Shown here piece after piece: positions 20,074 through 41,000 of a stretch of DNA of 64,000 nucleotides. Numbering within the stretch: the first letter of the stretch is position 1; each line of letters begins with the position of its first letter. The stretch lies in sequence record KJ019152.1. One strand, 5' to 3'. The translations under genes were made by a program, and so were the position numbers. The notes beneath the pieces are model-generated. The model worked only from the letters and a program-made list of their open reading frames with translations. It made no database searches and was not told where the DNA came from.

Positions 20074-20095
20074 CTAAAACTAGGAAACACACACA

Positions 20096-20117
20096 GGAGG
20101 GCAACCCTCCTTTTTTT
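20096..20117 (+). terminator. intrinsic terminator closing the pilin cassette
   Basis: GGAGGG-caa-CCCTCC followed by a T-run. Confidence 0.8.
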
Positions 20118-20150
20118 GTGCTATAATTATAAGTGAGTTGTGAGATTTCT

Positions 20151-20432: not shown

Positions 20433-20460
20433 GGCACCTATATACACAAAAAGGATTCCT

Positions 20461-20670: not shown

Positions 20671-20797
20671 AGCGATTAACGACTATTATTCGCTTCATGG
20701 ACTCCCTGTTCCCGATTGGAAACTGAAAAAGAATCCAGACTGGTGGATTGAATACTTACTTTCTCTTGGATTAACTGATAACAATGAACCCCTTTAA
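20645..20797 (+). CDS. small hypothetical protein
   Basis: MEIAQTIDEAINDYYSLHGLPVPDWK... Confidence 0.55.
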   Translation: MEIAQTIDEAINDYYSLHGLPVPDWKLKKNPDWWIEYLLSLGLTDNNEPL

Positions 20798-20956
20798 GAT
20801 ACTCGGACCTTTCCTAAACCTATTGGTGGTGTATAGTCTATGGTATTCTGACTTATACAGTAGGAATCGATACTACGCATATGGTATTGTATTACTACAC
20901 ATTCTCGTACTGGCATCAATTCCAACCATACCCGCAATTCTATATTGGTATTAATT

Positions 20957-21607: not shown

Positions 21608-21628
21608 AGTGTGAATATTCACACTTTA
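21605..21628. repeat. perfect 24-bp palindrome
   Basis: TAAAGTGTGAATATTCACACTTTA equals its own reverse complement. Confidence 0.9.
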
Positions 21629-21670
21629 AGTATTATATAAATATTAAAGAATACATATTTCTTTGCATAA

Positions 21671-21877
21671 ATGAAACGTCCAGCCTTTTATTTGGTTGCG
21701 AGTGTTGTTATTGTTCAGATGTTAATGGCGGCGGGGGTATTATTTGGTTGTTTTGCACGACCGGATCCCCGTTGTACCGGAGATAAGGCATCTGATTTAC
21801 TGAATAATATTATTGTACAAACTTTCGCACTCTATGCGGCTGAGAAAGTTTCCCATAAAGATGATAAACAAGTATAG
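21671..21877 (+). CDS. small hypothetical protein
   Basis: ORF track; late promoter at 21636. Confidence 0.55.
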   Translation: MKRPAFYLVASVVIVQMLMAAGVLFGCFARPDPRCTGDKASDLLNNIIVQTFALYAAEKVSHKDDKQV

Positions 21878-21916
21878 TGTGGTAGAATAGGGGAGAACAC
21901 CTCCACCTATTTTTTT

Positions 21917-22405
21917 ATGCCTATCAATAAAGAGTATTATGATAAATGGTATGGGATATGGAGTTCCCAATCAGAAGATGTATTGGAAGTTACTGCCTTA
22001 GTTAGAGCTATTGAATGTACTAATGGGTGTATTCAGTGGGCGTTTAGGGACGATGATGACAGGTCACTACCCATTGAGAAGACCAGAGAGGCTATGAAAC
22101 TCTCCATGGGTGTGATGAAGAATAAGGTTTTACCATTCCCTGATGGTGGGAAGTTTGTTATCCCAGAGGATGTAGTTCCCCTCATGGATAAGTCCAGAGA
22201 TATTTACATTAGAGGATTCAAACAAGGTGATGAGGATGCCTACCAAGAGTTTATGGCACTATCCAAGTCACACTTTGTTGTAATGGGTAGAGAGAGGATG
22301 GATAGAAACTTCCAGAAGGTGAAGGATCATTTCATAGATGTGTTTAGTGACTACTGGATTGAGATGGGTAGGGGATATGTTTATGCCCTTGGGGAGTATG
22401 TATAA
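21917..22405 (+). CDS. hypothetical protein
   Basis: ORF track, 162 aa. Confidence 0.65.
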   Translation: MPINKEYYDKWYGIWSSQSEDVLEVTALVRAIECTNGCIQWAFRDDDDRSLPIEKTREAMKLSMGVMKNKVLPFPDGGKFVIPEDVVPLMDKSRDIYIRGFKQGDEDAYQEFMALSKSHFVVMGRERMDRNFQKVKDHFIDVFSDYWIEMGRGYVYALGEYV

Positions 22406-25210: not shown

Positions 25211-25585
25211 ATGAATACATATGGTTCTCCCGAAGGTTATCTCTTTAACCTTCATACCTGCTCAGCATCAGAAGCGAAGCGAATGTGGAAAGAATCTATA
25301 AAGAATGATTGGAAACATAAATGTGCTTATTGTGGATCGGAACATGAAATTACTTTAGATCATATAGTACCCAAAGCGAAAGGGGGTACTAGTCATACAA
25401 CCAATGTCGTAGCTTGTTGTCGTTCTTGTAACGGGAGTAAGGCATATGAGGATTGGATTATCTGGTATATTCAACAGCCATTCTTCACTGAAGAGAGGAG
25501 GGAGGCTATTGAAAAGTGGATGGAGAAGGGCCTCCTCAACAATAACTTAGTTGCATATCCACCCAGAAGAAATGTCGTTTATTGA
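25211..25585 (+). CDS. HNH endonuclease (CxxC...DH...CxxCN)
   Basis: CAYCG...TLDHIVPKAKGG...NVVACCRSCNGSK. Confidence 0.85.
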   Translation: MNTYGSPEGYLFNLHTCSASEAKRMWKESIKNDWKHKCAYCGSEHEITLDHIVPKAKGGTSHTTNVVACCRSCNGSKAYEDWIIWYIQQPFFTEERREAIEKWMEKGLLNNNLVAYPPRRNVVY

Positions 25586-25801: not shown

Positions 25802-28800
25802 ATGATCTCAACAGCGACTAAGATTAAATTTAAAAGGTCTGGTGTAGCCGGACGTAGACCCTCCTTAGCTGATCTTCAGTTAGGTGAATTGGGGATCAAT
25901 TATAACGATGGTAAACTATTTTTCCGACAGGAAAATGAAGTAGTTGGCTCTCGTATCATTGAACCTGGACAGGGTGATGTAATCGGTAAGACTATTTTCG
26001 TATCCACAAAGGGTAACGATAACAATAGTGGTCTTAACGAAAGAGATGCCAAGAGAACTGTTAAAGCGGCCGCCGCAGTAGCAGAACCTGGTGACTCCAT
26101 CAAACTGTATCCAGGTCAGTACATCGAAGATAACCCTATCGTATTTAAGGATAGGGTATCTGTAGAGGGTATGGAGCTTCGTAACGTTCTCGTTACTCCA
26201 GCCAACCCCAGTAAAGACTTGTATCAAGTTGGTGAGGCGTTCCACGCTACCAACCATTCCTTTGTGTCCAATAGGGATTCAACAGATGGTGCCTCTATTA
26301 TCACCTATCGTCCTCTAGAGGGAACTGCGTCTGACAGGTATTTTGACGCGGCTAGACTCATCAGGGACAATCTTAGCTTCATTGCTAACGAGACAGTAGG
26401 TTTCCTAACCAGTGGATATTCAGGCTTTGCCGCTGGTCAGAGATCACAGGACGCTGCTCGTGCTCTAGAACTAAACAAGAACTTCATAGTAGAAGAAGCA
26501 TTTCAATATATCAACTCTCCTGATTATACAGGAGCCACATACTTCAACCCAGACCCAGCACAGTGTAAGAGAGACCTAGGAAATATCATTGATGGTTGGA
26601 GATATGATCTCATCTCTGATGGTAACACCAGATCTACTGGTCTTGGTCTAACCTACTACGCACCTATTCCCTTTGTGAATAGTGCTAATGTTGCTGACCT
26701 TGTATACAACAGAAATAACGGTGATGTTCTAATTGAAACCGACGTAGATACACAGGTTTCAGTTGGTGAGAAGATCAAACTACAGGATATCAGACTAGAG
26801 TGTGGTTCCTACAATAACGACTTCTTTATCACTGGTTTCAAGTATGATAACACCAGTGGTATTGGAACAGTTAATCTACCCTTTATCCATAACGTCAAGG
26901 TTGGAGACCTTGTTAAGTTTGATGGTTTAGAGTTTGATTGTCCTGCCTATGGTGCCATTGAATATGGTATCCAAGACTTCAAGTATAATGAAACTACTGG
27001 TGGAAGTGTTGTCACACTCACCGAAGATCACGATCTAAAGATTGGTGACACCATTGAACTAAGAGACCTTCAGTTCGATTGTCCCGCCTATGGTGGTGAC
27101 TTCACTAACATCATCAACCTAGAATACAATAAGACCAGTGGTCAGGGTGTTATCACATATGACAAACCCGCCGATCTCAAGTCTGGTGACGTTGTTATCC
27201 TCTATGACCTCACACTAACTTGTGATGCTTATGGTAACGCTATCTCAGTTACTGATTTCTCTTATGATAACTTCACTGGTATCACTGAAGTAGAAGTAAA
27301 TAGACCCCACAACCTCCGTCCCGGAGACCTAATCAAACTAGAGAACCTTAAGTTCTCTTGTGATTCCTACCTTAATGAAACATACAAGGTCTCTAACTTT
27401 GTATATAATGAGAGCACTGGTGATAGTGTCCTCACCCTAACTGAACCACATAGTTTAGTTGCTGGTAAGAACGTCAGACTTGCTGACCTAGTTTTCTCCT
27501 GTAACTCCTATGTTCCAACCGCTAAAGCAATCTCTGATTTCCAGTATGATGAAGTAGTTGGTATCTCTACTATTACTCTAGCATCTCCACACAACTTATC
27601 AGTTGGTGAGCAGTTCAGACTAGAGGACCTAGTATTCTCCTGTAACTCATACTCCTTCACTGATATTCCTATCATTGATGCACCATATGATAATGTAACT
27701 GGTTATGTAACCCTATCGTTCTCTGGTGACCACGGACAACAGGTTGGTGAGAGAGTAAGACTCAGAGATATTGAGTACTCCTGCCCTGGTGGTTCAGGTA
27801 TCACTACAACCTTGTTCCCCGATGGAACCTTTGGTTATGAGTTTGAAATCCTAAGTGTTCCAAACACTAAGAAGATGATTCTTAATGTTGGCACCTCCAC
27901 TATTGAACACTCCTATGTGAGTGGTGGTACTGCTACCGTTGGTATTACAACTACTATCTTCCCTGATGGAACACAAGGTTTCGACTTCAATGTATCCAGT
28001 GTTAATAGTTCCACTGTTATCGAAGCAAGTGTTGGTATTTCTACCATCGCTCACAACTATGTTTCTGGTGGATCATTATTCGTTGGTTTCACTACCACAG
28101 TATTCCCCGATGGAACACAAGGTGATACCTTCAGAGTTAATTCTATTCCTTCTAGCACTCAAATCAGTGTTAATGTTGGTGTATCTTCTATCGCCCATAC
28201 TTTCGTATCCGGTGGTACAGCAACTGACCTAGACTCTTTCATCCCTGTATCTGGTTTCACCTACAATGAAGGTGACGGAACTGGACTAGTATCCCTAGAC
28301 AAGGCACACAACCTAGTGGTTGGTGACTCTTTTGTTCTAGAGGATCTTAAGTTCAACTGTAACTCCTACAGAACAGGTGGTACTTCTACTATTGATATCA
28401 CTAACTTTGAGTATGATAAGGTAACCGGACTATCTACAGTCACACTATCTTCTTCACACAACCTACATGTTAATGATACCGTAGCACTATATGATATCAA
28501 GTTCTCTTGTCCTGGTGGTTCAGGTATTACAACTAATATCTTCCCCGATGGAACCAGAGACAACTTCTATGATGTAGTTGCTGACCTAAACCCCAACCAG
28601 ATTATTGTTCGTGTTGGTAAGTCTGACATTACTCACACATACGCTAGTGGTGGTAGTCTATCCGTTGGTATCACTACTAACATCTTCCCTGATGGAACCA
28701 GACCTTCTGGTGACTTCTTCCAGGTCATCTCTGTCCCCTCTACCAAGTCTGTTCTAACTCAGGTTGGTCTATCCTCTATCGCCCACTCATACGCAAGTGG

Positions 28801-31800
28801 TGGTAAGTTCTACACTGGTATCACTACCAATGTATTCCCACAGGTATTCACTGACCCCAACATCAAGGTAACCAACGCTGTATATGACGAAGTATCTGGT
28901 GTTATCACCATTACTACTAACAAGGCACACGGACTTACCGCTACCGCACCTGTTCTACTACAGGACCTAAACTTCTCTTGCCTCTCTGGTGGTGTAGGAA
29001 ACACCCCAGGCAACCTTGTATTCCCCAGGAACCAGGAAGTTTATGATGTTGTGTCCGTTCTATCTACTACACAATATACGATCAATGTAGGTCCTTCTGA
29101 CTTCGCTCACGCATATGTTGATGGTGGTACTTCTACCACACAGAACATCACTAAGGCATCCTACAACAAAGGAACTGGTGATCTAACAGTAACCCTAGAC
29201 AAGCAACACGGTTATTCAGTTGGTGATCGTGCTAGTGTGGTTGATCTCCTCTTCTCCTGTCAGTCTGGTGGTCCTAACAACCAACCTGGAACACTTCTAT
29301 TCCCTCGTCCTACTGATGAGTATGAAGTTCTATCCGCAAGTGGTAAGACACTCACAGTTAATGTTGGAGCGTTCCCATCACTAGTTCATACCTATAAGAA
29401 TGGTGGATCACTAACCTATAGTTCTACTGTACTTCCTGTAAGTAACGCAGTTTATGATCAATCAACTGGAGTTCTAACACTTACCACATCAATTGCACTA
29501 GGGGCACCTGTTGGTTCTACCATTAAGATGCAGGGTCTAAACTTCTCCTGTGCCTCTGGTGGTCCTGGTAATGACGCTGGTGCTATTGTATTCCCAAGAC
29601 TAGACACCCCTACCTTCAAGGTTAAGGAAGTCAAGAGTGGTGTATCCTATGTTATCAATGTAGGAACCTCTACACTCTCACACACATATACATCTGGTGG
29701 TTTCTCCTCACTCAAGAAGTTGAAGAACGACCCCAATATTTTCAAAGTTATCGACACCCCAACACCTAGTAAGGTTATTACTAATGTAGGTGTCTCATCT
29801 ATCGTTCATGACTATGTGAGTGGTGGTAATATGTTCGTGGGTATCACCACTAATGTATTCCCTGATGGAACTCGCCCTGATGGAAGTAGGTTCGAAGTTA
29901 TCTCCGCCCTATCACCCAACCAGGCACTCATCAACATCGGTGTTTCTACTATCACCCACAACTACGATAGTGGTGGTAGGATGCAGTATGGTACTACCAA
30001 TGAGAGACCTGTTCTAGACTTCCTATACGATGGTCAGACTGGTATCTCCACTGTAACTATTAGAGGAACTCATGGTTTGAACCAGGGTGACCTAGTGAAA
30101 CTCAGAGGTCTTGAGTTCGCTTGTACTAACTCACCTGGTATTACAACTACTATCTTCCCAGATGGAACTGCCGCTGGTCTCAATATCTACAAGGTTACTG
30201 AGATTATTAGTAACAGTACCTTCAAGACAAATGTAGGTAGAGTTGGATTCGATCATACTTACATCCAAGGTGGTTCCGCTTTCGTTGGTATCACTACTAA
30301 CATCTTCCCAGATGGAACACAAGGTTACAACTATACAGTTGCCGCCATTCCTAATAAGAATCAGGTAACAGTTGATGTGGGTATCTCCAGTATCCAACAT
30401 GATTATATTCGTGGTGGATCACTATTCTCTGGTAAGACTAACGAGAGAGATATCGCAGACTTCAAGTATGATCACATCTCTGGTGATGCGGTTCTTACCT
30501 TCAGAAAGGCACAGAACTTATTCACACAAGATCTAGTAAAACTTAAGAACCTTCAGTTTGATTGTCCAAACTCTACTGGTATCACTACTACTCTCTTCCC
30601 AGACGGAACCAGAAGTAACCTCTTCCTAATCAAGGAGAGACTAAACCCAACACAGTTCAAACTCAATGTTGGCACTTCACCATTCGGTCATGACTATGTG
30701 AGAGGAACAGGTCAGGCATTCGTTGGTATCACTACTAACATCTTCCCTGATACCAAGACACAACCAAGTAAGTTATTCAAGGTTGTTGATGTCCCAACTC
30801 CTACTACTATCTCCGCCAAGATTGGTGTATCCACTATCTCCCACTCATATGTTAAGGGTGGTAAGGTATTCGTTGGTATTAACACTGATATCTTCCCTGG
30901 AGATGAGCAAGTATCACCACTAGGTGACACATATACAGTTCAGAGTATCACTAAAGATGGTGAGTTGGTTATCAATGTTGGACTATCTTCTATCAGTCAC
31001 TCCTATGGTGGCGGTGGTAAGGTTCTATATGGACAGAGTTCTGGTAACAACCTACAACATATCACTGGTCCTGGTGTCCTAGATGCAACCATCGCCGCTG
31101 TGGACTTCGAGAAACAGGTAGCAATCAACGCACTAAACAACAGACCTTGGGGTTCATTCGTTCCTGAAGAGACTGCTGTTGTGGAGGCGTTCGCCTATGA
31201 TAACCAGACTGGTTTCGGAACAGTAACCGCTAGGGGAATCAACGTCAACACTGGTGACACCATCAGGATGAGTGACATTCAGTTTGTTTGTTCTGAGGAG
31301 TACGCAGGTGTAACCACTACCTTCTTCCCTGATAATACTAGACCAGAGGGTCAGTACTTTAGAGTAGAAAGAAGAATCAACATCGATGAGTTTGAAGTTA
31401 ATATTGGTGTTTCTACTATCAAACACGTATTCAACTACGAAACAGGTGGTAACGTATATCGTTACAGACAGTCTATTCTAGATGTTAACTACGATAGATC
31501 CAGTGGTATCACTAGTATCCGAGCAACCAAGCATGGTTACAAGGCAAAAGATATTGTGGAACTAGGTGATATCGAGTTCGATTGTCCCGTATTCAAACCT
31601 CAATATGACATTGAGAACTTTGTTTATGATAACACAACTGGTCTATCCACAGTTACTACTACTGTAGATAACACTATCAAGGTAGGTGACAATGTAAAAC
31701 TAGCAGACATCAAACTAGAGTGTCCTCCATATGGTAACCAGAGAGTTATTGATAACTTTGTTTATGATAACAAGAGTGGTCTTTCCACCATATCACTAAC

Positions 31801-34800
31801 AGCAGCACACGGACTCAACCTAAGACCTAGACCTTCTGTTTCTATCTCTACCGCCCTCTATGATAACCAGACTGGTATCCTAACCGTTACCACCAATGCT
31901 GACATCAACTTCACCGATAGAAGTGGTCAGGGTGTTCAACTCAGTGGTCTAAGGTTCTCCTGTGACTCCGCTGGTTTCCCTGGAACTCTCACCTACCCTG
32001 AAGAGAATCTAGTTTATGATATCCTAGAGATTCAGTCTCCTAGTAAGTTTAAGATTAATGTTGGTCTCTCCACTATCGCTCACGAGTATGTGAATGGTGG
32101 TGCCGCTACTAAGGTTGATAGATTCGATGTGAAACTACAGGGTATCAAGTTTGATTGTCCCGCCTATGGAAACACAATCGATGTTACTAACTTCCTATAC
32201 GATCAGAGAAGTGGTAACTCACTAGTTACCGTAGATAAGGCACACAAACTATCTGTTGGTGATAACATCAAACTAGCGGATCTCAAGTTCCAATGTGCTC
32301 CATATGGTAACGATTACAATGTTCTAAACGCAGATTACGACAACACAACTGGTATTATTACAGTAACCACTAACCAAAACATCAACGGTGTTGGTGTTGG
32401 TGATACTATTCGCCTCTCCAGACTACAGTTTGATTGTGTAGGTAGTGGTCCTGAGTATAATATCACTAACGTATTCTTCAATACTGGTAACAGATCAGTT
32501 ATTCTCACAGTTCCTGAAAGACCAATTGGTCTAAACCCAGGTGATGACATTAAACTAACCAATATGTCATACCTAGAAGGTGGTAGTGGTAATGTAGTTG
32601 CGTATCCAGACGGAAGAGATTCGAGTCTAAACATCTTCCGTATCAATGATGTTCAACCTAACTCCATTCTCCCTGGATACTTCGATGTAACCACAGCGTT
32701 CCCCAATGTTAAGGATCCTTTCGCGATCTTCAACAATACTGGTAGACTAACCACTGGTATTACTACTAACATCTACCCTGAGAATGTAGGTGCTGAAGGT
32801 GGTTTCTATGAAGTTATCCGCCTAAGACAAGATAACCAGTTTGAGATTCAGGTAGGAACCTCTACTATCACTCACAACTATGTGAGACAAGGACAGATGT
32901 TTACTGGTGTAACCACCAACTTCTTCCCTGGTAACCTACAGAACTCACCTAGAGGAAACATCTTTGAGATTGTGGAAGTTCCCACAGCAACACAGGTGAG
33001 AATCAATGTAGGTGTATCTTCTATCTCTCATAGTTATGATAGTGGTGGTCAGATGTTTGTTGGTATTACTACTAACATCTTCCCTGATGGAACCAGAGGT
33101 AACCTATTCCCAGTTGTTGGAGTGGCAAATACTCTCACCCTAAGAATCGACGCTGGTGTATCCAGTATTCCTCACAACTATGTTTCTGGTGGAGAACTAT
33201 TCGTAGGTATTACAACTAATATCTTCCCTGGTAACTCACAGAACTCACCAAGAGGTAGTATCTTCAAGGTTCTATCTAAGGATAACGAGTGTGGTGCTGA
33301 TAGATTCACTATCAATGTTGGTGTATCTTCCATCACTCACGGTTATGTTGAGGGTGGAACAGTCACCACTGGTGTTACAACTAACAAGTTCCCTGATGGA
33401 ACACACGGATTCAAGTTCCCTGTTATCGATGTTCTAGATGACAACTACTTCACCGTGAATGTTGGTACTTCTACTATCACTCACAACTATATCTCTGGTG
33501 GTTTCACTAGAAGACTTGAAGTTCCTATCAATAGTTTCGTATATGATAGAGTTTCTGGTCTATCCACAGTGGGTATCCAAAGTCACAGAATGAATATCGG
33601 TGACCTTGTGAAACTTCGTGATGTGAAGTTCAACTGTGATCCATATGGTGGAGAAAAGACTATCTCTGGTGTTGTTTATGATAATACCTCTGGTAGAATG
33701 ACCGTTAACACCACTGGTTCTCATAGTCTAAACATCAATGATGTTGTGAAACTCTCCAATATTCAGTTGGATTGTTCCCCATATGGTAACGAGAGAACTA
33801 TTACCGCCGCCACCTACAACAGAAACAATGGAAACCTAAGTGTTCAGGTATCTGAACCTCACAACCTCAAGATTAGTGAGAATGTGAAACTTAAAGGTTT
33901 AGAGTTCTCCTGTTCCTCAGAACACGCAGGTGTGACAACAACAATCTTCCCAGATTCAACCGCACCTTCTCTAAACATCTACGCCATCCAGAGTATCACC
34001 AACTCCACAACCTTCATGGTTAATGTTGGAACCTCTACTATCAGTCACAACTATGTTTCTGGTGGTTCCGCTTTCGTAGGTATCACAACTAACATCTTCC
34101 CAGGTGATAGCCAGAACTCCCCCAGAGGTTCTTTCCTCAGTGTGGTAGATATCCCAGCATCAGACGCCTTCGTGGTGAATGTAGGGGTTTCTACTATCTC
34201 TCACGGGTATGTTAGAGGTGGATTGGTTCAGACAGGTATTACAACTGATGTATTCCCTGATGGAACACAGAGTGATTTCTTCAAGATTGAAGATGTCCCT
34301 AGTAATAATACAGTTGTAATCAACGCAGGTATCTCTTCTATCATCCATAGATACAACTCTGGTGGTTTCGCCGCCAAGTATGTTACCTATCAGTCCAATA
34401 ACTCACAACTACTTGATAGTTCTGTTATTAGAGTGAGTGGTGATTGTATGGCAGTTGGTGAGAGAGTTGAAGAACTCGCAGGTATTGTTACCTCCATCAT
34501 CAAGAATGGTCCTTCAATCGCACCTGGTGGTATTCCAGTAGATGTGGTAAGTGCATCCTACGACCAGTCTGGTGGAGCACTATCAGTCACAGTCAAAGAC
34601 GCAATTGACCTCACACCAACTAACATAGTTAGAATCGAAGGTCTTATCTTCGAGTGTGAGTCCTCTGGTGTAACAAACACTCGTGTATATCCTGACAATA
34701 AGGTATTCAACTATGAGGTTCTATCAGTTCAGTCTCCAACAACCTTCACTATCAATGTAGGTTCTCAGGCAGATATCCCACACACATATGTGAATGGTGG

Positions 34801-37705
34801 AACTGTAAGACCAGGTAACAAGTTTGATGTGGCAACCGCAACCTACAATACTGAAAATGGTATTGTGAGAGTTACTACCACTGAAGATAACTACTTGGTT
34901 CTTGGTAGAGGAGTTAACCTACAGGGTCTAAACTTCTCCTGTACCTCTGGTGGTCCTAACAACAAACCTGGAACACTAACCTTCCCCGACAAAACACCAA
35001 CCAATGTAACCGCCGCCACATATGATAGTGTGACTGGTGTATTACGTATCACAACCAACAGACCTCACCAAGCATACAAGGACGCGTTTGTATCCCTAAA
35101 CGGACTAACCTTCACTTGTGATCCAGGTGGTCCTCTAGTATTCCCTAGAAACCCTGATACTAAGTCCTTCAGAGTTACTAAGAGAGTTGATGACTACACA
35201 TATGAGTGTCAGTTGGCACCGACCAATAAGGTTCATACTTATCTAAGTGGTGGTACTTCCTCCACAGGAAACGGAAACTTCAGAGTTTCTCGTCTCATTG
35301 ATACAAAGACCTTCGAAGTCACAATGGTTCCTCTAGATCTACCACATACCTATGTAAATGGTGGTTCCGCCGCTAGTGTATTCACTAGACAGATCATTGA
35401 TGGAATCAACATCAACACTAGGAAGTGTGCTAGAGACGTTAGACGTATCTACCTCGCAGTGGCACACGATATCACTCGTGGTGGTAACTGGAAGTGTGTT
35501 GAAGGAGCGAAACTCTACTACGATAACGTGGGTCAAACCAAGTTTATCTCTGGTGGTGAAGTAAATCAAACCGTTGAGGCACTTGACTTCTCCCTAAACA
35601 TTGTTAGATGTTTAATCAACAACGTAACATGGGGTGGAGTTCCAAGAGGATATCTCACTAAGGGTGAGAGAAGTGAACTAAGAATTCCATCTTCAGCTAA
35701 GACTTCAGTGGTTGGTTTCAGACAACAACTACTTTCCAACCAATACACTACTCAGAAGAAGAGTATTTCTGGTATGGTATACGATAACCTTACGGGTATC
35801 GCAACCGTCACCACTAAACTCTCACATGAACTCATCAAGTATGATGGTATTCAACTCTCAGATATTGAGATGAGATGTACTGGTAGTCCAAGGATTACCA
35901 CCAATGTATTCCCTGATGGAACACAAGGTGAGATCTTTGAGGTTATGGAAACTCTAGATGATAGAGTATCATACATCGTAACTGACGCGTCATACACCAA
36001 CACCACTGGTAAGTTGGTAGTAACAACAACAGGAAACAATGATATTCCTGTTGGATCAAGAGCAAAACTAGATGGTTTACTCTGGACTTGTTCATACGAT
36101 CCTTCAAAACAACTTAAGTTCCCAGAGAACAGGAAGTTCCGTTATGAGGTTATCGCAAAACCAGATGGTACAACACTAGAGTTCAATGTTGGTATCTCTA
36201 CGATTCCACACACATTTGTTCCAGCTCCTATAGATGTTGAATACACAGTCAAGGAGGATCCAGTTAAGTTTAAGGTTCATGTTGGTACAGTTTCCTTCCC
36301 ACACACCTACTTCGGTGGTGGAACAGTATGGCACAAACTACCATTCACTCCACCTTTCACCCAAACACAGATCAAGGACGTATCACAACAGAAAGATCCA
36401 GTCCAGTTCTCTAACAATACTCCTAACGGATGTGCTAATGTATTCTCCGCTATCAGTAATTGTATTGGTGTTGTTACTAGTATCGTAGCAAATGGATTAG
36501 AAGGATCAGGTATCTCCACAACTTATCCAGGTAATGATGGTAAAGGTGTTCCAACTATGGATGAGATGCCTTCACAGGGTGTTGGTAACATTATCAAAGG
36601 TCCATACATCAGAAACTGTACGAACTTCGTTCCCAAGTCTATTGGTATGAGAATGGATGGTTTCGACGCGGAACCTGGTGATGAAATCTCCAATGGTGTT
36701 CAAGGTTCATCTAACGTTGACTCCTTCACCCAGTTCAACCCTGGTGGTGTTGGTTGTTCCATCTCTAACGGAACCTACCAACAGTTGGTTTCTATCTTCA
36801 CTATCTGTTGTGATGAAGCAATCGTATGTGACTCTGGAGCACAACTCGACCTCACTAACTCCAACTCTTCCTTCGGTAGATTGGGTCTAGTCGCAAGAGG
36901 TATTGGTGATAAACTCTCCAAGTGTATCGACAGATATACTGGTATCGTCGCCAAAGAGGCATCAATCGAAGATGACCTAGTTGTTGTGAAGGGTATTGGT
37001 GATAAGAGACCCTACGATGGTCAGGGTATTTTCTTCGGAGAACTCTTCAGGGATGTGGTTAGTATCGAAGTTCTGGACGGTGGTTCAGGTTACAACGATG
37101 ATATTCCACCTAACGCGTTTGTCGCAGAACCTACTGGTCCCGCTGGTATTAAGGCGGAAGTTTCACCAACAGTCAGAGATGGTGTTGTTGTTTCTATCGA
37201 GGTTATCGCAAATGGTAACCAATACAGAGAGAAATTCCCTGAGGTTGTAATATCACCTCCTAAGAGTCCTCTTGGTAGAACCGCAAAAGCAAGGGCAATT
37301 ACCGAACCTCTCTACTATAATGTAGAAAGTTCTTCCCCACCTGAAGAGGGTACAACTAGTATCATTTTCAAACAGCGTCTAAATAATACCGTATCGGTAG
37401 GCACAACTGTATTCTTCTCTAGATTGAGTCTACAGATTGCCTCCTCTCACTCCTTCGAATACATTGGTGCTGGTAACAGCATTAACGGAGCAAGACCTTC
37501 TGAAGGTGGAGTTCCAATTAAGGAAAATGAGATCGTGAAGGAAGACGGTGGTTCAATTGTCTATACCTCCACTGACCAGGCAGGTAACTTTAACATTGGT
37601 GACGATTTCGTTATCAACCAGTTCACTGGTACTATCACTGGTAGATCGTTCGATCAATCAGTCCTAAATAAAGTTACTCCACTCATCATCGCCCTAGACA
37701 GTTAA
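25802..37705 (+). CDS. giant virion structural protein (3967 aa) with nested repeat domains
   Basis: Late promoter; fibre-type N-terminus KRSGVAG...LQLGELGINYNDGKLF; split beta-helix; helical bundles; 31 split repeats. Confidence 0.85.
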   Translation: MISTATKIKFKRSGVAGRRPSLADLQLGELGINYNDGKLFFRQENEVVGSRIIEPGQGDVIGKTIFVSTKGNDNNSGLNERDAKRTVKAAAAVAEPGDSIKLYPGQYIEDNPIVFKDRVSVEGMELRNVLVTPANPSKDLYQVGEAFHATNHSFVSNRDSTDGASIITYRPLEGTASDRYFDAARLIRDNLSFIANETVGFLTSGYSGFAAGQRSQDAARALELNKNFIVEEAFQYINSPDYTGATYFNPDPAQCKRDLGNIIDGWRYDLISDGNTRSTGLGLTYYAPIPFVNSANVADLVYNRNNGDVLIETDVDTQVSVGEKIKLQDIRLECGSYNNDFFITGFKYDNTSGIGTVNLPFIHNVKVGDLVKFDGLEFDCPAYGAIEYGIQDFKYNETTGGSVVTLTEDHDLKIGDTIELRDLQFDCPAYGGDFTNIINLEYNKTSGQGVITYDKPADLKSGDVVILYDLTLTCDAYGNAISVTDFSYDNFTGITEVEVNRPHNLRPGDLIKLENLKFSCDSYLNETYKVSNFVYNESTGDSVLTLTEPHSLVAGKNVRLADLVFSCNSYVPTAKAISDFQYDEVVGISTITLASPHNLSVGEQFRLEDLVFSCNSYSFTDIPIIDAPYDNVTGYVTLSFSGDHGQQVGERVRLRDIEYSCPGGSGITTTLFPDGTFGYEFEILSVPNTKKMILNVGTSTIEHSYVSGGTATVGITTTIFPDGTQGFDFNVSSVNSSTVIEASVGISTIAHNYVSGGSLFVGFTTTVFPDGTQGDTFRVNSIPSSTQISVNVGVSSIAHTFVSGGTATDLDSFIPVSGFTYNEGDGTGLVSLDKAHNLVVGDSFVLEDLKFNCNSYRTGGTSTIDITNFEYDKVTGLSTVTLSSSHNLHVNDTVALYDIKFSCPGGSGITTNIFPDGTRDNFYDVVADLNPNQIIVRVGKSDITHTYASGGSLSVGITTNIFPDGTRPSGDFFQVISVPSTKSVLTQVGLSSIAHSYASGGKFYTGITTNVFPQVFTDPNIKVTNAVYDEVSGVITITTNKAHGLTATAPVLLQDLNFSCLSGGVGNTPGNLVFPRNQEVYDVVSVLSTTQYTINVGPSDFAHAYVDGGTSTTQNITKASYNKGTGDLTVTLDKQHGYSVGDRASVVDLLFSCQSGGPNNQPGTLLFPRPTDEYEVLSASGKTLTVNVGAFPSLVHTYKNGGSLTYSSTVLPVSNAVYDQSTGVLTLTTSIALGAPVGSTIKMQGLNFSCASGGPGNDAGAIVFPRLDTPTFKVKEVKSGVSYVINVGTSTLSHTYTSGGFSSLKKLKNDPNIFKVIDTPTPSKVITNVGVSSIVHDYVSGGNMFVGITTNVFPDGTRPDGSRFEVISALSPNQALINIGVSTITHNYDSGGRMQYGTTNERPVLDFLYDGQTGISTVTIRGTHGLNQGDLVKLRGLEFACTNSPGITTTIFPDGTAAGLNIYKVTEIISNSTFKTNVGRVGFDHTYIQGGSAFVGITTNIFPDGTQGYNYTVAAIPNKNQVTVDVGISSIQHDYIRGGSLFSGKTNERDIADFKYDHISGDAVLTFRKAQNLFTQDLVKLKNLQFDCPNSTGITTTLFPDGTRSNLFLIKERLNPTQFKLNVGTSPFGHDYVRGTGQAFVGITTNIFPDTKTQPSKLFKVVDVPTPTTISAKIGVSTISHSYVKGGKVFVGINTDIFPGDEQVSPLGDTYTVQSITKDGELVINVGLSSISHSYGGGGKVLYGQSSGNNLQHITGPGVLDATIAAVDFEKQVAINALNNRPWGSFVPEETAVVEAFAYDNQTGFGTVTARGINVNTGDTIRMSDIQFVCSEEYAGVTTTFFPDNTRPEGQYFRVERRINIDEFEVNIGVSTIKHVFNYETGGNVYRYRQSILDVNYDRSSGITSIRATKHGYKAKDIVELGDIEFDCPVFKPQYDIENFVYDNTTGLSTVTTTVDNTIKVGDNVKLADIKLECPPYGNQRVIDNFVYDNKSGLSTISLTAAHGLNLRPRPSVSISTALYDNQTGILTVTTNADINFTDRSGQGVQLSGLRFSCDSAGFPGTLTYPEENLVYDILEIQSPSKFKINVGLSTIAHEYVNGGAATKVDRFDVKLQGIKFDCPAYGNTIDVTNFLYDQRSGNSLVTVDKAHKLSVGDNIKLADLKFQCAPYGNDYNVLNADYDNTTGIITVTTNQNINGVGVGDTIRLSRLQFDCVGSGPEYNITNVFFNTGNRSVILTVPERPIGLNPGDDIKLTNMSYLEGGSGNVVAYPDGRDSSLNIFRINDVQPNSILPGYFDVTTAFPNVKDPFAIFNNTGRLTTGITTNIYPENVGAEGGFYEVIRLRQDNQFEIQVGTSTITHNYVRQGQMFTGVTTNFFPGNLQNSPRGNIFEIVEVPTATQVRINVGVSSISHSYDSGGQMFVGITTNIFPDGTRGNLFPVVGVANTLTLRIDAGVSSIPHNYVSGGELFVGITTNIFPGNSQNSPRGSIFKVLSKDNECGADRFTINVGVSSITHGYVEGGTVTTGVTTNKFPDGTHGFKFPVIDVLDDNYFTVNVGTSTITHNYISGGFTRRLEVPINSFVYDRVSGLSTVGIQSHRMNIGDLVKLRDVKFNCDPYGGEKTISGVVYDNTSGRMTVNTTGSHSLNINDVVKLSNIQLDCSPYGNERTITAATYNRNNGNLSVQVSEPHNLKISENVKLKGLEFSCSSEHAGVTTTIFPDSTAPSLNIYAIQSITNSTTFMVNVGTSTISHNYVSGGSAFVGITTNIFPGDSQNSPRGSFLSVVDIPASDAFVVNVGVSTISHGYVRGGLVQTGITTDVFPDGTQSDFFKIEDVPSNNTVVINAGISSIIHRYNSGGFAAKYVTYQSNNSQLLDSSVIRVSGDCMAVGERVEELAGIVTSIIKNGPSIAPGGIPVDVVSASYDQSGGALSVTVKDAIDLTPTNIVRIEGLIFECESSGVTNTRVYPDNKVFNYEVLSVQSPTTFTINVGSQADIPHTYVNGGTVRPGNKFDVATATYNTENGIVRVTTTEDNYLVLGRGVNLQGLNFSCTSGGPNNKPGTLTFPDKTPTNVTAATYDSVTGVLRITTNRPHQAYKDAFVSLNGLTFTCDPGGPLVFPRNPDTKSFRVTKRVDDYTYECQLAPTNKVHTYLSGGTSSTGNGNFRVSRLIDTKTFEVTMVPLDLPHTYVNGGSAASVFTRQIIDGININTRKCARDVRRIYLAVAHDITRGGNWKCVEGAKLYYDNVGQTKFISGGEVNQTVEALDFSLNIVRCLINNVTWGGVPRGYLTKGERSELRIPSSAKTSVVGFRQQLLSNQYTTQKKSISGMVYDNLTGIATVTTKLSHELIKYDGIQLSDIEMRCTGSPRITTNVFPDGTQGEIFEVMETLDDRVSYIVTDASYTNTTGKLVVTTTGNNDIPVGSRAKLDGLLWTCSYDPSKQLKFPENRKFRYEVIAKPDGTTLEFNVGISTIPHTFVPAPIDVEYTVKEDPVKFKVHVGTVSFPHTYFGGGTVWHKLPFTPPFTQTQIKDVSQQKDPVQFSNNTPNGCANVFSAISNCIGVVTSIVANGLEGSGISTTYPGNDGKGVPTMDEMPSQGVGNIIKGPYIRNCTNFVPKSIGMRMDGFDAEPGDEISNGVQGSSNVDSFTQFNPGGVGCSISNGTYQQLVSIFTICCDEAIVCDSGAQLDLTNSNSSFGRLGLVARGIGDKLSKCIDRYTGIVAKEASIEDDLVVVKGIGDKRPYDGQGIFFGELFRDVVSIEVLDGGSGYNDDIPPNAFVAEPTGPAGIKAEVSPTVRDGVVVSIEVIANGNQYREKFPEVVISPPKSPLGRTAKARAITEPLYYNVESSSPPEEGTTSIIFKQRLNNTVSVGTTVFFSRLSLQIASSHSFEYIGAGNSINGARPSEGGVPIKENEIVKEDGGSIVYTSTDQAGNFNIGDDFVINQFTGTITGRSFDQSVLNKVTPLIIALDS
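26680..36340 (+). repeat. 31 A-halves (YDxxTG...HxLxxGDxVxLxDLxFxC) and 31 B-halves (GITTxxFPDG...VNVGxSxIxHxYxxGG) in four blocks
   Basis: Hand parse: 15, 11, 3 and 2 pairs at about 26680-31030, 31170-34380, 34530-35380 and 35750-36340. Confidence 0.85.
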
Positions 37706-37709: not shown

Positions 37710-38060
37710 ATGGCAGCAGTTGCTTTAAATACGTTCAAAACGGTCAGGCATTTAGTTTCTGATTCCAATGTGGGGATTTATACATCCCCCATTGGTGTTG
37801 CCTCTATTGTCCTATACGCTCAGGCGACACACGTTGCGAACGATGAAAGTGTATATTTCATTAACTTTTCACATGCTCGTCCCGACGAGGATCCTGTGCA
37901 GTTTGAAATCATTAAGGATGGTCCAGTTATCCCTAATGACGCACTAAACCTATTAACAGGTAGATTAGTTCTCGAAACTGGAGACGAACTTAGAGTATCA
38001 GGAAATACGACCGGAGATGTGAAGGTTGTTGTTTCTATTCTAGAGACTGCAAAGTCTTAA
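37710..38060 (+). CDS. small structural protein coupled to the giant gene
   Basis: 116 aa, predicted beta-rich; 4 bp after the giant gene stop. Confidence 0.65.
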   Translation: MAAVALNTFKTVRHLVSDSNVGIYTSPIGVASIVLYAQATHVANDESVYFINFSHARPDEDPVQFEIIKDGPVIPNDALNLLTGRLVLETGDELRVSGNTTGDVKVVVSILETAKS

Positions 38061-38092: not shown

Positions 38093-41000
38093 ATGCCTCT
38101 AAATTATCTTACCGGAAGAGTAAGTAGATTACAAGTTGGATTTCCAGGGTTTTCAACAGCAAAGGACCTTACAGTTGATGTAGCAGGTGCCATTGGTATT
38201 GATACCCAAAACCCAAGAGCAGCTGCCGACTTCCCAGATGTCAGTATCCGTGGTGATATTGTTGACTCTGTTGGATTTACCGGTGGTATTGGGTATTTTC
38301 TAGCGCAAGATGTTCAGGGTGTTCGGTGGGTAGAGGCTCCACCAATCAACTCTAACGCCATCTTAGTGTTAGACAATGGAGTTATCGTTGGTGCTGGATC
38401 ATTCATTGGTTTAAACTTTGACTCTGGTAAGGATGAGGACTTCCTCTCGGTTGTTCCTGACCCACTAAACCCACAGATTGCAAAGATTGCATATGATGTT
38501 CGTTGGGTAAGATATAATTACGGTAATAATAAAGGTATCTCCACAGGTTTTGGAGATAATGGTGACTACTCCTCTATCCCTGGTTATGGAACCACAGAGG
38601 CAGTTGGTGTTACCTCAGTTGGTATTGGTACTAACCAACCACTAGATGACTTCCAAGTTGGTATTGGATCTACTGGTGTTACTATCAACGGACCTCTAGG
38701 TCTAGTTGATGCAGAAATTATTAAAGCAAAATCAATCTCGGTTGAAGGAAACCTAGAGGTTGAATCACTTATTGTTAGACCTGGTGTTGCCACTCTAACC
38801 ACTCTAGATGTATTGAACGAGGCGTTCATACCAGTAGAGTATGTTGGTTTCTCCAGCATTCAAGATGCAAATATTGATGCTCTCTTTGCTAATCAGTTAC
38901 TAGCAGGTATTACTACCCTAGGTTTCGGTGGTGAAGATGTATTCATCCTCAACGACTTATATGTTCAGGGTGGTTTAGGTACCTTCGATGGCGACGTATT
39001 CGTTGGTGGAGACCTAACTGTTAAGGGTGAGACGTTCTTCAACCAGATTAACGCAGTCAACTTATCAGTATCTGGTATTGCCACTATCGTCCAAGCGGAG
39101 ATAGCTGTTGGTTTAGTTACCGATCTAAAAGTATCTGGTTTCTCTACACTATCAGATTTCTCATTCAACATTGGTGTTGGTACATACCTAGAACTAGAAG
39201 ATCTAGATGTATCTGGTGTTGGTAGTTTTGGTGTTGTCAACTCTGGTGATATTAATGTTAGTGGTGGTTTAACCGCTAGTGAGATTGATGCAGATAAGGG
39301 ATACATTGGTATTCTCACAGCAGACTCTATTGTATCTGGTGCAGGTACTATTGGTTCTATCGAGTCTGATGGGAACCTAACAACACTTAATGATATTATT
39401 GTTGGTGGTGCTTCAACCTTCGTTGGTTTGGGTACTTTCCAAGACGATCTCTTTGTTGGTGGTGACCTCTTTGTTAGAGGTGATGTTACCTTTAAGAATA
39501 TTAATGGTGAACAACTACTAATCAGTGGTATTGGTACCATCAAGGAACTAGTCTTTGATAGTGGTATTGGAACCTCACTAGAAGTGAGAGATCAGATTAC
39601 GACTGGTATATCTACGATCAATGAAGCAGATATTCAAGATGCCGCTGTTGAGAGACTCACTGTTGGTGATGCAGAGATCATCGGTATCGCAACTATTACC
39701 GAGATTGATGTAGATAGGGGTAGAGTTGGTATCCTAACTGGTACAGACCTCTCCTATGCTGGTATCGGTACTATCACGGAGATTGATGTTGACCAGGGTA
39801 GAGTTGGTCTAGTCACTGGTGACACACTACTATACTACGAACAGTCTAGGATCAATAGAGTTACCTTCTTTGATAACTACCTATCAGTTAATCAGAGTCT
39901 AAGAGTTTCTGGTCTCTCCACCTTTGTTGGAACAGGTACATTCTTTAATGACTTGTATGTTGGTGGTGACCTATATGTTGCTGGTGAACTAAACTTCAAA
40001 CAACTCAATGGTGAGAACCTATACCTAACTGGTGTTGGTACCATCTATGATTTACGTAACACTGTTGGTTTCATTACTAACCTCTACGTAGAAGAGTCTG
40101 TAACTGGTTTAGCAACCATCAGTAGTCTAGTTGGTTCTTCCGCTACCATCACAGACTTCACTGGACAGTCACTACTCATCCAGAATCCATTCAACCCAAT
40201 GCCTTTGGATCCAACTGGGATCCCAGGACAGGGTGTTATTGATAGTCTCCTAGTTAGAAACCTAACTTCTTCTAACAACATTCTAGCCAATGACATTGAT
40301 GCCAACTTCGTTGACACCGATGATCTAAAGGCTGGTGTTGGTACTATCACTGACCTAGAGTGGACTACCGCTGTTGGTGATGACACTACTACCAATACTC
40401 TACAGGTTACTGATACAGCAACCATTAACATCATCGATGCCAATCAGATCGATGCCGAAGATGCTAATATTGGAGTTGCCACCCTCTCTAGTCTCCTAGT
40501 AACTGGTGTCACTACCTTCAAGGGTCAGGTTGATATTGAGGATATTGAGTTCGTTGACCAGAGTGTCACCGGTATTTCCTCTATCAACATCCTCAAGTTC
40601 AATGTTGGTTATGGAACTTACCTAGAGGTCACTGACTCAGTAACTGGTGTTGGAACTATTGGTCTTGCCAGTATCACAACCGCTCAGGTATCCTTCCTAG
40701 ATGTAAGAGATGAGGTAGTTGGAGCATCCACTATTGGTGTTCTATCAGTAACTGAAGGATTTGCAGTATCTGGTTTCTCCACCTTTGTTGGTTTCACTAC
40801 CTATAAAGGAGATGTATTTGTTGATGGTAACTTAACTGTTACTGGTTTCGTTAGTTTCACACAACTAAACGCTGATCAATCACAGATTGGTATCCTAACT
40901 GTATTCGATGCGTTAGACGCTAGAACGGGTGTTGGTACATTCAAACACCTAGAGACAGTAGATAGTGCAGTTCTATCAGGTGTATCTACCATTGGACTCA

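What the first reader, a model, noticed from the sequence alone, without database searches (positions are those of the whole stretch)
26680..36340. Giant protein built from recursively nested domains that balance like brackets
Seen: the 3967-aa ORF has two half-repeats, A (YDxxTG...HxLxxGD...FxC) and B (GITTxxFP...VNVG...HxYxxGG). Contiguous A+B units occur (e.g. 28860-29140), so A+B is one domain. Most halves are stacked instead: block 1 reads AAAAAAAA BBB AA BB (B[AB AB AB]B) B AB B AB B B. Treating A as an opening bracket and B as a closing one, every block closes to zero exactly where unique sequence resumes (15/15, 11/11, 3/3, 2/2; maximum depth 8). Insertions use at least four different loops: A|B junction, after FP, after HGLN, and mid-B. 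Linkers fit the nesting: A followed by A usually ends C-x-x-Y, and B followed by B usually ends GG-x-x-F-V/T. Inference: each outer domain is completed by a chain segment returning from up to about 1400 aa away, giving a branched, tree-like fibre from one polypeptide. I know of no description of same-family nesting this deep.
Basis: partly seen in the sequence, partly recalled or inferred. Interest (0 to 1): 0.95.

Follow-up and report, generated by a model that had tools for sequence, protein, structure and literature searches.

The report
Phage fibre of nested split barrels
A 3,967-residue structural protein of a marine cyanophage is built from 31 small beta-barrel domains whose two halves are separated by further copies of the same domain, nested up to eight deep like brackets; this is an extreme case of a rare way to build a protein.

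Summary
ORF 25802-37705 belongs to Synechococcus phage ACG-2014f and is annotated only as a hypothetical protein. It holds 31 A half-repeats and 31 B half-repeats. Their order is a perfectly balanced bracket string (15/15, 11/11, 3/3, 2/2; depth 8), and it returns to zero exactly at each non-repeat spacer.

- **One domain:** a contiguous A+B unit is predicted as one compact 8-strand beta-barrel (pLDDT 91, pTM 0.82). Its nearest structural matches are E1-FCCH-type barrels.
- **Insertions:** four domains are interrupted inside a half, each at a predicted loop, and resume after complete AB units.
- **Orthologues:** 29 of 33 close orthologues stay balanced, and their length differences are whole A+B pairs.
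- **Co-evolution:** across 24 orthologues, bracket partners up to 1,067 residues apart co-vary in divergence as strongly as contiguous halves (r 0.21 vs 0.23; non-partners -0.03; permutation z = 6). Sequence neighbours do not.

No inter-half contacts could be read because the tools return no coordinates, so the three-dimensional "tree" shape remains inferred. Same-fold recursive insertion is already known from the Si3 insertion of cyanobacterial RNA polymerase (eight SBHM domains, four of them discontinuous). I therefore call this a new, far more extreme variant of a known kind, in a domain family that Pfam does not describe.

The parts
25802..37705 (+). Giant ORF, 3967 aa (Syn7803C25_264 / AIX44187.1, 'hypothetical protein')
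25802..26677 (+). Conserved non-repeat N-terminal region, aa 1-292 (82% mean identity among 24 orthologues)
26678..31024 (+). Block 1, aa 293-1741: 15 A + 15 B, depth 8. The outermost pair is A aa 295-335 with B aa 1692-1741
26684..27787 (+). Run of eight consecutive A halves (aa 295-662)
28808..28843 (+). N-terminal fragment of a split B half (aa 1003-1014, ends after F-P-Q)
28853..29710 (+). Three contiguous AB units inserted inside that B half (aa 1018-1303); the first was modelled
29711..29836 (+). Remainder of the split B half (aa 1304-1345; HMM positions 14-48), partner of A aa 481-522
31025..31171 (+). Spacer, aa 1742-1790, similar to aa 3238-3278
31172..31459 (+). Single contiguous AB unit, aa 1791-1886
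31460..33511 (+). Block 2b, aa 1887-2570: 7 A + 7 B, depth 6
31733..31822 (+). N-terminal piece of a split A half (aa 1978-2007, HMM 1-30, ends H-G-L-N)
31829..32110 (+). AB unit inserted inside that A half (aa 2010-2103)
32111..32164 (+). C-terminal piece of the split A half (aa 2104-2121, HMM 33-45)
32447..32755 (+). Degenerate AB unit at the tip of block 2b (aa 2216-2318). It has lost both the A-Cys and the B-His and is the fastest-evolving unit (identity 0.35)
33512..34375 (+). Block 2c, aa 2571-2858: AAABBB hairpin (modelled with AF2)
34376..34531 (+). Spacer, aa 2859-2910; aa 2882-2903 are similar to aa 3544-3565
34532..35374 (+). Block 3, aa 2911-3191: AB, then A + split B enclosing one AB (3 A + 3 B)
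35375..35752 (+). Spacer, aa 3192-3317 (second copy of the spacer module, contiguous here)
35753..36331 (+). Block 4, aa 3318-3510: A, B N-piece (aa 3362-3388), inserted AB (aa 3389-3479), B C-piece (aa 3480-3510)
36332..37702 (+). Conserved non-repeat C-terminal region, aa 3511-3967 (84% mean identity; PHROG 'tail fiber' match at aa 3634-3700)

Best explanation
**Domain.** A (about 45 aa, four strands, ending in an invariant Cys) and B (about 48 aa, four strands, ending H-x-Y-x-x-G-G) are the two non-homologous halves of one small beta-barrel domain of about 95 aa.

**Architecture.** The giant protein holds 31 such barrels. Instead they are inserted into loops of one another, usually the A|B loop and three times into other loops.
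- The chain runs 'outward' through a series of A halves, makes a contiguous AB at the tip, and returns through the matching B halves.
- Each outer barrel is therefore closed by a segment 100-1356 residues downstream.
- The result is a set of two-stranded stacks of barrels with side branches. Both ends of each stack lie at its base, so each stack is itself an excursion from the conserved non-repeat parts.

**Role.** The protein is most likely a virion fibre or baseplate appendage of this T4-like cyanophage. The conserved termini would anchor it, and the fast-evolving barrels, the tips above all, would be exposed binding modules.

**Shown:** the bracket grammar, single-domain prediction for AB, insertion at predicted loops, balanced indels, and partner-specific co-evolution.
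**Inferred:** physical contact of bracket partners, rod or tree geometry, inside-out folding order, virion location, and binding role.
For: 1. **Grammar.** The string is balanced and returns to zero only at spacers.
2. **AB is one domain.**
   - AF2 gives pLDDT 91.2 and pTM 0.82 with 8 strands.
   - Foldseek aligns 94 of 95 residues to single barrels. These include the Uba1 FCCH domain (TMq 0.64, rmsd 2.4), the P22 I-domain, the endosialidase barrel and the F1 N-terminal barrel.
   - A 133-aa protein carries one AB alone (P0301).
3. **Insertion sites are loops.** All four fall between strands of that model: residues 23-32, 44-52, 58-62 and 72-73 of the unit.
4. **Orthologues.** 29 of 33 close orthologues (50-98% identity, 2226-4318 aa) are balanced. 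Their differences are whole pairs:
   - AB versus AABB, twice.
   - An extra AB bead.
   - AAB(b) versus AAAB(b)(b).
   - Loss of AAABBB + AABB + ABABAB, which takes block 1 from 15/15 to 7/7.
5. **Cys-His coupling.** The strongest A-B coupling in 525 contiguous units is A-Cys with B-His. Both are present in 515, both lost in 9, and discordant in 1.
6. **Rate covariation over 24 orthologues.**

   | Pair class | Mean r |
   |---|---|
   | Nested bracket partners | 0.205 |
   | Contiguous partners | 0.231 |
   | All non-partners | -0.025 |
   | Non-partner A-B pairs within 150 aa | 0.015 |
   | First-in-first-out pairing | 0.001 |

   - The partner ranks 1st of 30 B halves for 8 of 17 nested A halves, and in the top five for 14 of 17.
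   - In the permutation test, 0 of 20000 matchings reach the observed sum (z = 6.0).
7. **Partner conservation.** Conservation levels of partners correlate (Spearman 0.51, p = 0.004).
8. **Nested model.**
   - AF2 of AAABBB gives pLDDT 77.8 and pTM 0.57, with A halves at 82-90.
   - It superposes at TMq 0.60 over 299 columns on the BFVD model of a 33%-identical stretch of another ACG-2014f protein.
9. **Linkers depend on context**.
10. **Family.** 646 clusters carry the domain. Among apparently complete representatives, 36 are nested and balanced, with many different architectures.
11. **Role.**
    - The gene lies in a structural gene cluster.
    - PHROG 'tail fiber' families match.
    - The S-T4 homologue is annotated as baseplate wedge subunit.
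    - The termini are 82-84% conserved against 55-62% for the blocks.
    - FCCH-type barrels are known outward-facing decorations of phage tail tubes (PMC13576161).
Against: - No contact map or coordinates were available, so no A-B contact of a nested pair was seen directly.
- The nested model is only moderately confident (pTM 0.57), and the first ~12 residues of each B are poorly predicted.
- The coupling-energy test is weak:
  - z = 1.4-1.7 for this protein.
  - 5 of 6 independent representatives are positive, Stouffer 1.96.
- Rate covariation replicated only as a trend in a second family: the bracket matching ranks 9th of 120, and 2nd of 24 for nested pairs only.
- Two nested pairs show no covariation (A341/B1642 and A2573/B2812, r = -0.13).
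- With crude models, 39 of 88 apparently complete distant representatives parse as unbalanced. Most are off by one, probably through missed divergent halves.
- There is no proteomic or imaging evidence that the protein is in the virion.
Confidence: 0.8

Rival explanations
1. **Inter-chain completion.** The halves pair as brackets predict, but between chains of an oligomer. A-half i of one chain would close with B-half i of a neighbouring chain (three-dimensional domain swapping in a dimeric or trimeric fibre), not within one chain.
For: - Most phage fibres are oligomers (established knowledge).
- The grammar, balanced indels and partner covariation are equally expected here, because the same index pairs would be in contact.
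- The tools model monomers only.
Against: - Contiguous AB units and a single-AB 133-aa protein fold as monomeric barrels in prediction.
- The short A->A and B->B linkers place the two ends of each inner domain next to the outer A|B loop, as intrachain insertion requires.
- The monomer model of AAABBB is ordered throughout its A halves.
Confidence: 0.1
2. **Independent modules.** A and B are separate small domains that form homotypic arrays (A-runs and B-runs). Equal numbers would be a by-product of how the gene grew by segmental duplication, not a structural requirement.
For: - Runs of up to eight A and five B exist.
- A and B are not homologous to each other.
- Some distant proteins at first looked A-only.
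Against: - Those 'A-only' proteins have a divergent B after every A.
- B and A halves are interrupted mid-way and resume after complete AB units. This makes no sense for autonomous modules of 10-30 residues.
- AB is predicted as one barrel.
- Cys and His are lost together.
- Indels are always balanced.
- Neighbouring A-A and B-B halves do not co-vary (r 0.07 and 0.02), but bracket partners do.
Confidence: 0.04
3. **Non-nested pairing.** A and B halves do combine into barrels, but with another pairing rule, such as first A with first B or nearest available partner. That would give crossed (pseudoknot-like) connections.
For: Counts alone (31/31) do not fix the pairing. No contacts were observed.
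Against: - First-in-first-out partners show r = 0.001, against 0.173 for bracket partners in the same blocks.
- The bracket partner beats 85 of 107 B halves that are closer in sequence.
- Return to zero at every spacer, and balanced content inside every split half, are specific to nesting.
- In the coupling-energy test, FIFO pairing scatters around zero.
Confidence: 0.04

Closest known systems
Si3 insertion of cyanobacterial RNA polymerase beta' (eight SBHM/HABAS domains; PMC10895346, PMC11515920)
   Same: Copies of one small beta domain are inserted into one another. The chain 'folds over itself', several domains are built from distant sequence segments, and the result is an elongated 150-Å appendage. 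The whole array is itself an insertion in a host loop.
   Different: - **Fold:** no RNA polymerase chain among the 50 best PDB matches listed.
- **Scale:** 8 domains with 4 discontinuous there, against 31 domains with 17 discontinuous, depth 8 and several branches here.
- **Variability:** Si3 is a fixed cellular insertion. Here the architecture varies among hundreds of phage proteins by gain and loss of whole pairs.
E1 FCCH-type small beta-barrels used as insertion or decoration domains (Uba1 FCCH, P22 coat I-domain, endosialidase barrel, siphophage tail-tube FCCH domains)
   Same: - They are the best structural matches of the AB unit (TMq 0.51-0.64).
- All are barrels of about 90-120 aa that sit as insertions or outward-facing add-ons.
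- Three homologues carry a precomputed PF16190 hit, and one BFVD relative is named after FCCH.
   Different: - Foldseek E-values are all above 1e-3.
- No Pfam family matches any of 13 AB units, even at E = 10.
- The AB model has 8 strands, against the six-stranded Greek-key barrel described for FCCH.
- None of these is reported to be nested in itself.
Giant 'baseplate wedge' / YHYH-domain proteins of T4-like cyanophages (e.g. S-T4 YP_009810955.1, S-CAM7 gp208)
   Same: - True homologues: S-CAM7 at 61% identity over the full length; the S-T4 group at 26-35% over the AB parts.
- They share the A/B halves, the nesting, and the genome neighbourhood of structural genes.
   Different: They are annotated only as hypothetical, baseplate wedge or YHYH proteins. 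I found no description of their split-domain grammar. Copy numbers and nesting patterns differ.
Fold-back fibre tips such as the T4 gp37 needle (from my own knowledge, not tested here)
   Same: The chain runs to a distal tip and returns alongside itself, so both ends lie at the base.
   Different: That is an intertwined trimeric needle held by metal ions, not a stack of monomeric barrels each closed by an outgoing and a returning segment. It has no recursion or branching.

Membership tests
Recursive same-fold domain insertion (type case: RNAP beta' Si3) | Many copies of one small domain family within one polypeptide | tested here: met
   31 A and 31 B halves match two profiles at iE 1e-10 to 1e-24.
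Recursive same-fold domain insertion (type case: RNAP beta' Si3) | Some copies are discontinuous in sequence, with complete copies lying between their parts | tested here: met
   17 of 31 domains are discontinuous. Four are split within a half and enclose 1-3 complete AB units.
Recursive same-fold domain insertion (type case: RNAP beta' Si3) | The separated parts come together in space to form the domain | tested here: inconclusive
   Supported indirectly by partner-specific rate covariation (z = 6), balanced indels and the AF2 nested model (pTM 0.57). No coordinates were available, so no contacts were read.
Recursive same-fold domain insertion (type case: RNAP beta' Si3) | The domain is an SBHM/HABAS fold inside the RNA polymerase trigger loop | tested here: not met
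   This is a phage structural gene. No RNA polymerase chain appears among the 50 best PDB matches listed. It works like Si3 but is not a member.
E1_FCCH (PF16190) beta-barrel family | Significant sequence match to the family profile | tested here: not met
   None of 13 AB units matches PF16190 at E <= 10, and the whole protein has no Pfam hit. Only 3 of 120 homologues carry a precomputed PF16190 hit.
E1_FCCH (PF16190) beta-barrel family | Same fold as the FCCH barrel | tested here: inconclusive
   The best PDB match is Uba1 FCCH: TMq 0.64, rmsd 2.4 Å over 94 columns, probability 1.00, but E = 5.8e-3.
Phage tail fibre / baseplate appendage of T4-like cyanophages | Encoded among virion structural genes and related to annotated fibre or baseplate proteins | tested here: met
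   It lies directly upstream of three baseplate-wedge-like giants. It matches PHROG tail-fibre families 17885 and 5342. Homologues are annotated baseplate wedge (S-T4), and the BFVD structural matches include proteins named fiber (S-SM2) and tail fiber-like (ACG-2014f).
Phage tail fibre / baseplate appendage of T4-like cyanophages | Present in the virion at the tail | not testable with these tools
   This needs virion proteomics or cryo-EM.
Beads-on-a-string repeat fibres (tandem autonomous domains) | Each repeat is contiguous and copy number changes by single repeats | tested here: not met
   Only 14 of 31 domains are contiguous. Runs of A halves are followed by runs of B halves, and indels are A+B pairs that may be far apart.

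The most novel reading that the evidence does not exclude
A whole family of phage fibre proteins (at least 646 clusters at 50% identity) may be written in a context-free 'bracket' grammar. Barrels are closed by segments up to about 1,400 residues apart, nested eight deep and branched. The proteins evolve by gain and loss of whole hairpins, much like RNA secondary structure. They would fold from the tips inward, which lets a phage grow a dendritic, rapidly evolving binding organ as a pure insertion between fixed anchor domains. On this reading, even the non-repeat spacers are pieces of a duplicated scaffold module split by these trees.
Probability: 0.55. Interest if true: 0.85.

Novelty: new variant of a known kind. 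Interest (0 to 1): 0.8.

Why it matters
1. **Protein architecture and folding.**
   - Eight half-domains must wait, unpaired, for partners made hundreds to more than a thousand residues later.
   - That makes this a natural test case for co-translational folding and for how nested insertions nucleate.
2. **Annotation and structure databases.**
   - Pipelines that cut long proteins into pieces separate partners. BFVD holds this protein as three pieces of about 1,322 residues.
   - Repeat finders will call A and B as two separate repeat families.
3. **Phage biology.**
   - The variable barrels between conserved anchors are candidates for host-surface recognition in abundant marine cyanophages.
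   - The grammar tells which sequence segments belong to one surface module.
4. **Design principle.** It shows a second, independent and far larger use of the principle seen in RNA polymerase Si3.

Tried and rejected
- **Database searches that found nothing.**
  - Pfam on the whole protein and on 13 AB units: no family.
  - PDB by sequence with the protein, the AB profile and a 4,050-position orthologue profile: nothing credible.
  - Foldseek of the nested model against the PDB: no analogue of the three-barrel unit.
- **A and B as duplicates of each other:** rejected (hhalign probability 0.3%).
- **A/B halves in neighbouring ORFs:** none.
- **'A-only' distant proteins.** They seemed to contradict the pairing. 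They turned out to have a divergent B variant after every A.
- **Coupling-energy (mean-field DCA) test of partners.**
  - The sign is consistently right: 48 of 48, then 65 of 75 proteins.
  - It is weak per protein and has few independent cases, so I do not treat it as decisive.
- **Cys/His co-loss:** could not discriminate nested pairs, because nested A halves always keep the Cys.
- **Rate covariation in a second family:** a trend only.
- **Nesting depth versus conservation:** no significant trend overall.
- **MSA-based indel listing:** too fragmented to use directly. The token strings were used instead.
- **Literature searches:** no description of this architecture in phage proteins.
  - In one search my script printed a 61-residue consensus line (hmmemit -c) of the divergent B-variant profile, which the operators' rule forbids.
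  - The consensus lines that the alignment tool printed by itself were not used either.
Full report
**Identity and context.** The window is 100% identical to Synechococcus phage ACG-2014f isolate Syn7803C25 (KJ019152.1; Kyanoviridae, Atlauavirus), a T4-like cyanomyovirus. The feature is ORF 25802-37705 (+), 3967 aa, annotated 'hypothetical protein' (Syn7803C25_264).
- Upstream lie a 492-aa ORF and a putative endonuclease.
- Downstream lie a 116-aa ORF and three giant ORFs that match PHROG baseplate-wedge families.
- The giant ORF has no Pfam match and no PDB relative by sequence.
- It matches PHROG 'tail fiber' families 17885 and 5342.

**Checking the observation.** I split one contiguous unit (aa 1017-1112) into two seeds and grew profile HMMs on the protein itself.
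- Profile A has 45 positions and ends in an invariant Cys. Profile B has 48 positions, starts G-I-T-T-x-x-F-P and ends H-x-Y-x-x-G-G.
- The hits tile aa 293-3510. What is left over is three spacers, one degenerate B and two short B N-terminal fragments.
- With A read as an opening bracket and B as a closing one, depth reaches 8. It returns to zero at aa 1741, 1885, 2568, 2856, 3002, 3189 and 3509.
- So depth is zero at every spacer. Counts are 15/15, 11/11 (as 1/1 + 7/7 + 3/3), 3/3 and 2/2.
- One B of block 2 (aa 2257-2318) is degenerate. Its A partner has lost the Cys and it has lost the His.

Four domains are interrupted inside a half:

| Split half | First piece | Enclosed units | Resumes |
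|---|---|---|---|
| B | aa 1003-1014, after F-P | three complete AB units | aa 1304-1345 |
| A | aa 1978-2007, after H-G-L-N | one AB unit | aa 2104-2121 |
| B | aa 3050-3063, after F-P-D | one AB unit | aa 3155-3191 |
| B | aa 3362-3388, mid-B | one AB unit | aa 3480-3510 |

- The linker rules hold: C-x-x-[YF] in 14/16 A->A steps against 0/15 A->B steps, and the G-G-x-x-x-[VT]-G continuation in 13/16 B->B steps against 1/13 B->A steps.
- For 31+31 tokens in random order, the chance of valid bracket words closing at the three spacers is about 1e-5.

**Is A+B one domain?** The evidence says yes.
- AF2 on aa 1018-1112, with the 12 other contiguous units of the window as the alignment, gives pLDDT 91.2 and pTM 0.82. 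The model has eight strands, four per half.
- Foldseek aligns 94 of its 95 residues to single small barrels. These are the Uba1 FCCH domain (TMq 0.64, rmsd 2.4 Å), the P22 coat I-domain, phage endosialidase barrels and the F1-ATPase N-terminal barrel. All E-values are above 1e-3.
- A and B are not homologous to each other.
- All four insertion sites map to loops between strands of this model.
- In 525 non-identical contiguous units from 121 proteins, the strongest inter-half coupling is A-Cys with B-His. Both are present in 515, both absent in 9, and discordant in 1.
- A profile of the AB unit finds 646 clusters (50% identity) among 1.84 billion representatives. They include a 133-aa protein with a single AB.

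**Are stacked halves completed by their bracket partners?**

*Comparative grammar.* 120 homologues were retrieved.
- All 27 orthologues at 54-98% identity (giant, P0001-P0026) and the two shorter relatives P0031 and P0032 are balanced. The four more divergent relatives P0027-P0030 are not resolved by the parser.
- Architectural differences between them are always whole pairs:
  - AB versus AABB inside the split A (seven orthologues).
  - AB versus AABB at the start of block 3.
  - A fourth AB bead in P0020.
  - One more nested pair in block 3 of five orthologues.
  - In P0025, and in the block-1 part of P0027-30, loss of AAABBB, AABB and the three beads. Block 1 then reads AAAAA BB AB B AB BB, which is 7/7.
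- Distant giants (26-35% identity, many with PF14240) show other balanced nested words.
- Among 88 apparently complete representatives below 50% mutual identity, 49 parse as balanced (36 of them nested) and 39 do not.
- The unbalanced ones are mostly off by one, and the models demonstrably miss divergent halves.

*Co-evolution.* For each half I took the vector of pairwise differences among 24 orthologues and removed the component explained by the mean over all halves. I then correlated A halves with B halves.

| Pair class | Mean r |
|---|---|
| Contiguous partners | 0.231 |
| Nested bracket partners | 0.205 |
| All non-partners | -0.025 |
| Non-partner A-B pairs less than 150 aa apart | 0.015 |
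| Adjacent A-A | 0.068 |
| Adjacent B-B | 0.020 |
| First-in-first-out partners | 0.001 |

- The bracket partner ranks first of 30 B halves for 8 of 17 nested A halves. Those eight include pairs 1067, 594 and 414 residues apart. It ranks in the top five for 14 of 17.
- It beats 85 of 107 B halves that are closer in sequence.
- None of 20,000 random matchings reaches the observed sum (z = 6.0).
- Linkage or mosaic exchange of contiguous segments cannot produce this pattern.
- Partner conservation levels also correlate (Spearman 0.51, p = 0.004).
- Weaker tests point the same way:
  - Coupling energies learned on contiguous units favour bracket partners in 48 of 48, and later 65 of 75, proteins. 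Only 5 of 6 independent cases are positive (Stouffer 1.96).
  - In a second family of 23 orthologues the bracket matching ranks 9th of 120.

*Modelling.*
- AF2 on the natural AAABBB fragment (aa 2571-2860, with 29 orthologues) gives pLDDT 77.8 and pTM 0.57.
- All A halves are ordered (82-90). Low confidence is confined to the first dozen residues of each B.
- The model superposes at TMq 0.60 over 299 columns on the BFVD model of a 33%-identical stretch of another ACG-2014f protein. It has no analogue in the PDB.
- The tools return no coordinates, so I could not read which halves touch. This is the main gap.

**Mechanism proposed.**
- The chain goes out through A halves and back through B halves. 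Each barrel closes when its B arrives.
- Contiguous tip units can fold first and bring the next A and B ends together, so stacks would zip from tip to base (inferred).
- Every closed block has both ends at its base, so it behaves as an insertion.
- The spacers between blocks appear to be pieces of a duplicated module. Aa 1742-1784 resemble aa 3238-3278 (z = 7.6), and aa 2882-2903 resemble aa 3544-3565 (z = 5.3). This suggests the blocks sit in loops of a scaffold domain.
- The termini are conserved (82-84% identity) and the blocks are variable (55-62%). Tip units are less conserved than their enclosing domain in 8 of 12 comparisons.
- That fits conserved anchors with exposed, fast-evolving barrels. 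FCCH-type barrels are known outward-facing decorations on phage tails (PMC13576161).
- A role in adsorption is inferred, not shown.

**Comparison with what is known.**
- The nearest precedent for the principle is the Si3 insertion of cyanobacterial RNA polymerase. It has eight SBHM/HABAS domains, four of them built from distant segments, and is described as 'recursively inserted' (PMC10895346, PMC11515920).
- The present case differs in fold, host protein, scale (31 domains, 17 discontinuous, depth 8, branches) and evolutionary plasticity.
- I found no paper describing it.
- Verdict: a real feature, a new variant of a known kind, and of high interest.

Noticed in passing
window 31025-31171, 34376-34531, 35375-35752, 36332-36500: The non-repeat spacers are pieces of a duplicated module. 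Aa 1742-1784 resemble aa 3238-3278 (z = 7.6) and aa 2882-2903 resemble aa 3544-3565 (z = 5.3). A C-x-R-D...G-G-N motif occurs at aa 255-275 and aa 3209-3229. Copy 1 seems to be split by blocks 1 and 2, and copy 2 by block 4, which would be one more level of nesting. Distant homologues (e.g. P0236) have long arrays of this motif.
   Followed up: partly
window 32447-32755: The innermost unit of block 2b is a degenerate AB that has lost both the invariant Cys and the invariant His. It is the least conserved unit among orthologues (identity 0.35) and may be a specialised tip.
   Followed up: partly
all AB units, e.g. window 28853-29137: An invariant Cys at the end of A and an invariant His near the end of B form the strongest inter-half coupling, and they are lost together (9 joint losses against 1 discordant). 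Whether they form a metal site, a hydrogen-bonded pair or something else is unknown.
   Followed up: partly
window 37710-38060: The 116-aa ORF just downstream matches positions 1-113 of phrog_1276. The same family matches the giant protein at aa 851-926 with positions 92-168. In other phages this small protein may therefore be fused to an AB-like unit. The A/B profiles do not hit it.
   Followed up: partly
window 38093-52132: Three further giant ORFs (1868, 810 and 1956 aa) share PHROG baseplate-wedge families with one another in several repeated stretches, and they end in tail-fibre-like C-termini. Their own repeat architecture was not analysed.
   Followed up: no
BFVD entries A0A0E3G4F4_1 to _3: The public predicted-structure library holds this protein cut into three pieces of about 1,322 residues. 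That cut separates many bracket partners, so models of such pieces cannot be right for the orphaned halves.
   Followed up: no
P0236, P0165, P0200 and others (distant homologues): A divergent B variant of about 60 aa follows every A in some families. It escapes the B profile built here, so these proteins look 'A-only'. P0165 has about 24 flat AB units in a periodic four-unit pattern.
   Followed up: partly
window 25211-25585: A 124-aa ORF annotated 'putative endonuclease' lies directly upstream of the giant gene.
   Followed up: no
window 11153-22400: Ordinary cyanophage auxiliary genes lie upstream of the structural cluster: psbA, psbD, hli, ferredoxin and talC. A separate 763-aa 'tail fiber' gene lies at 11153-13444.
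   Followed up: no
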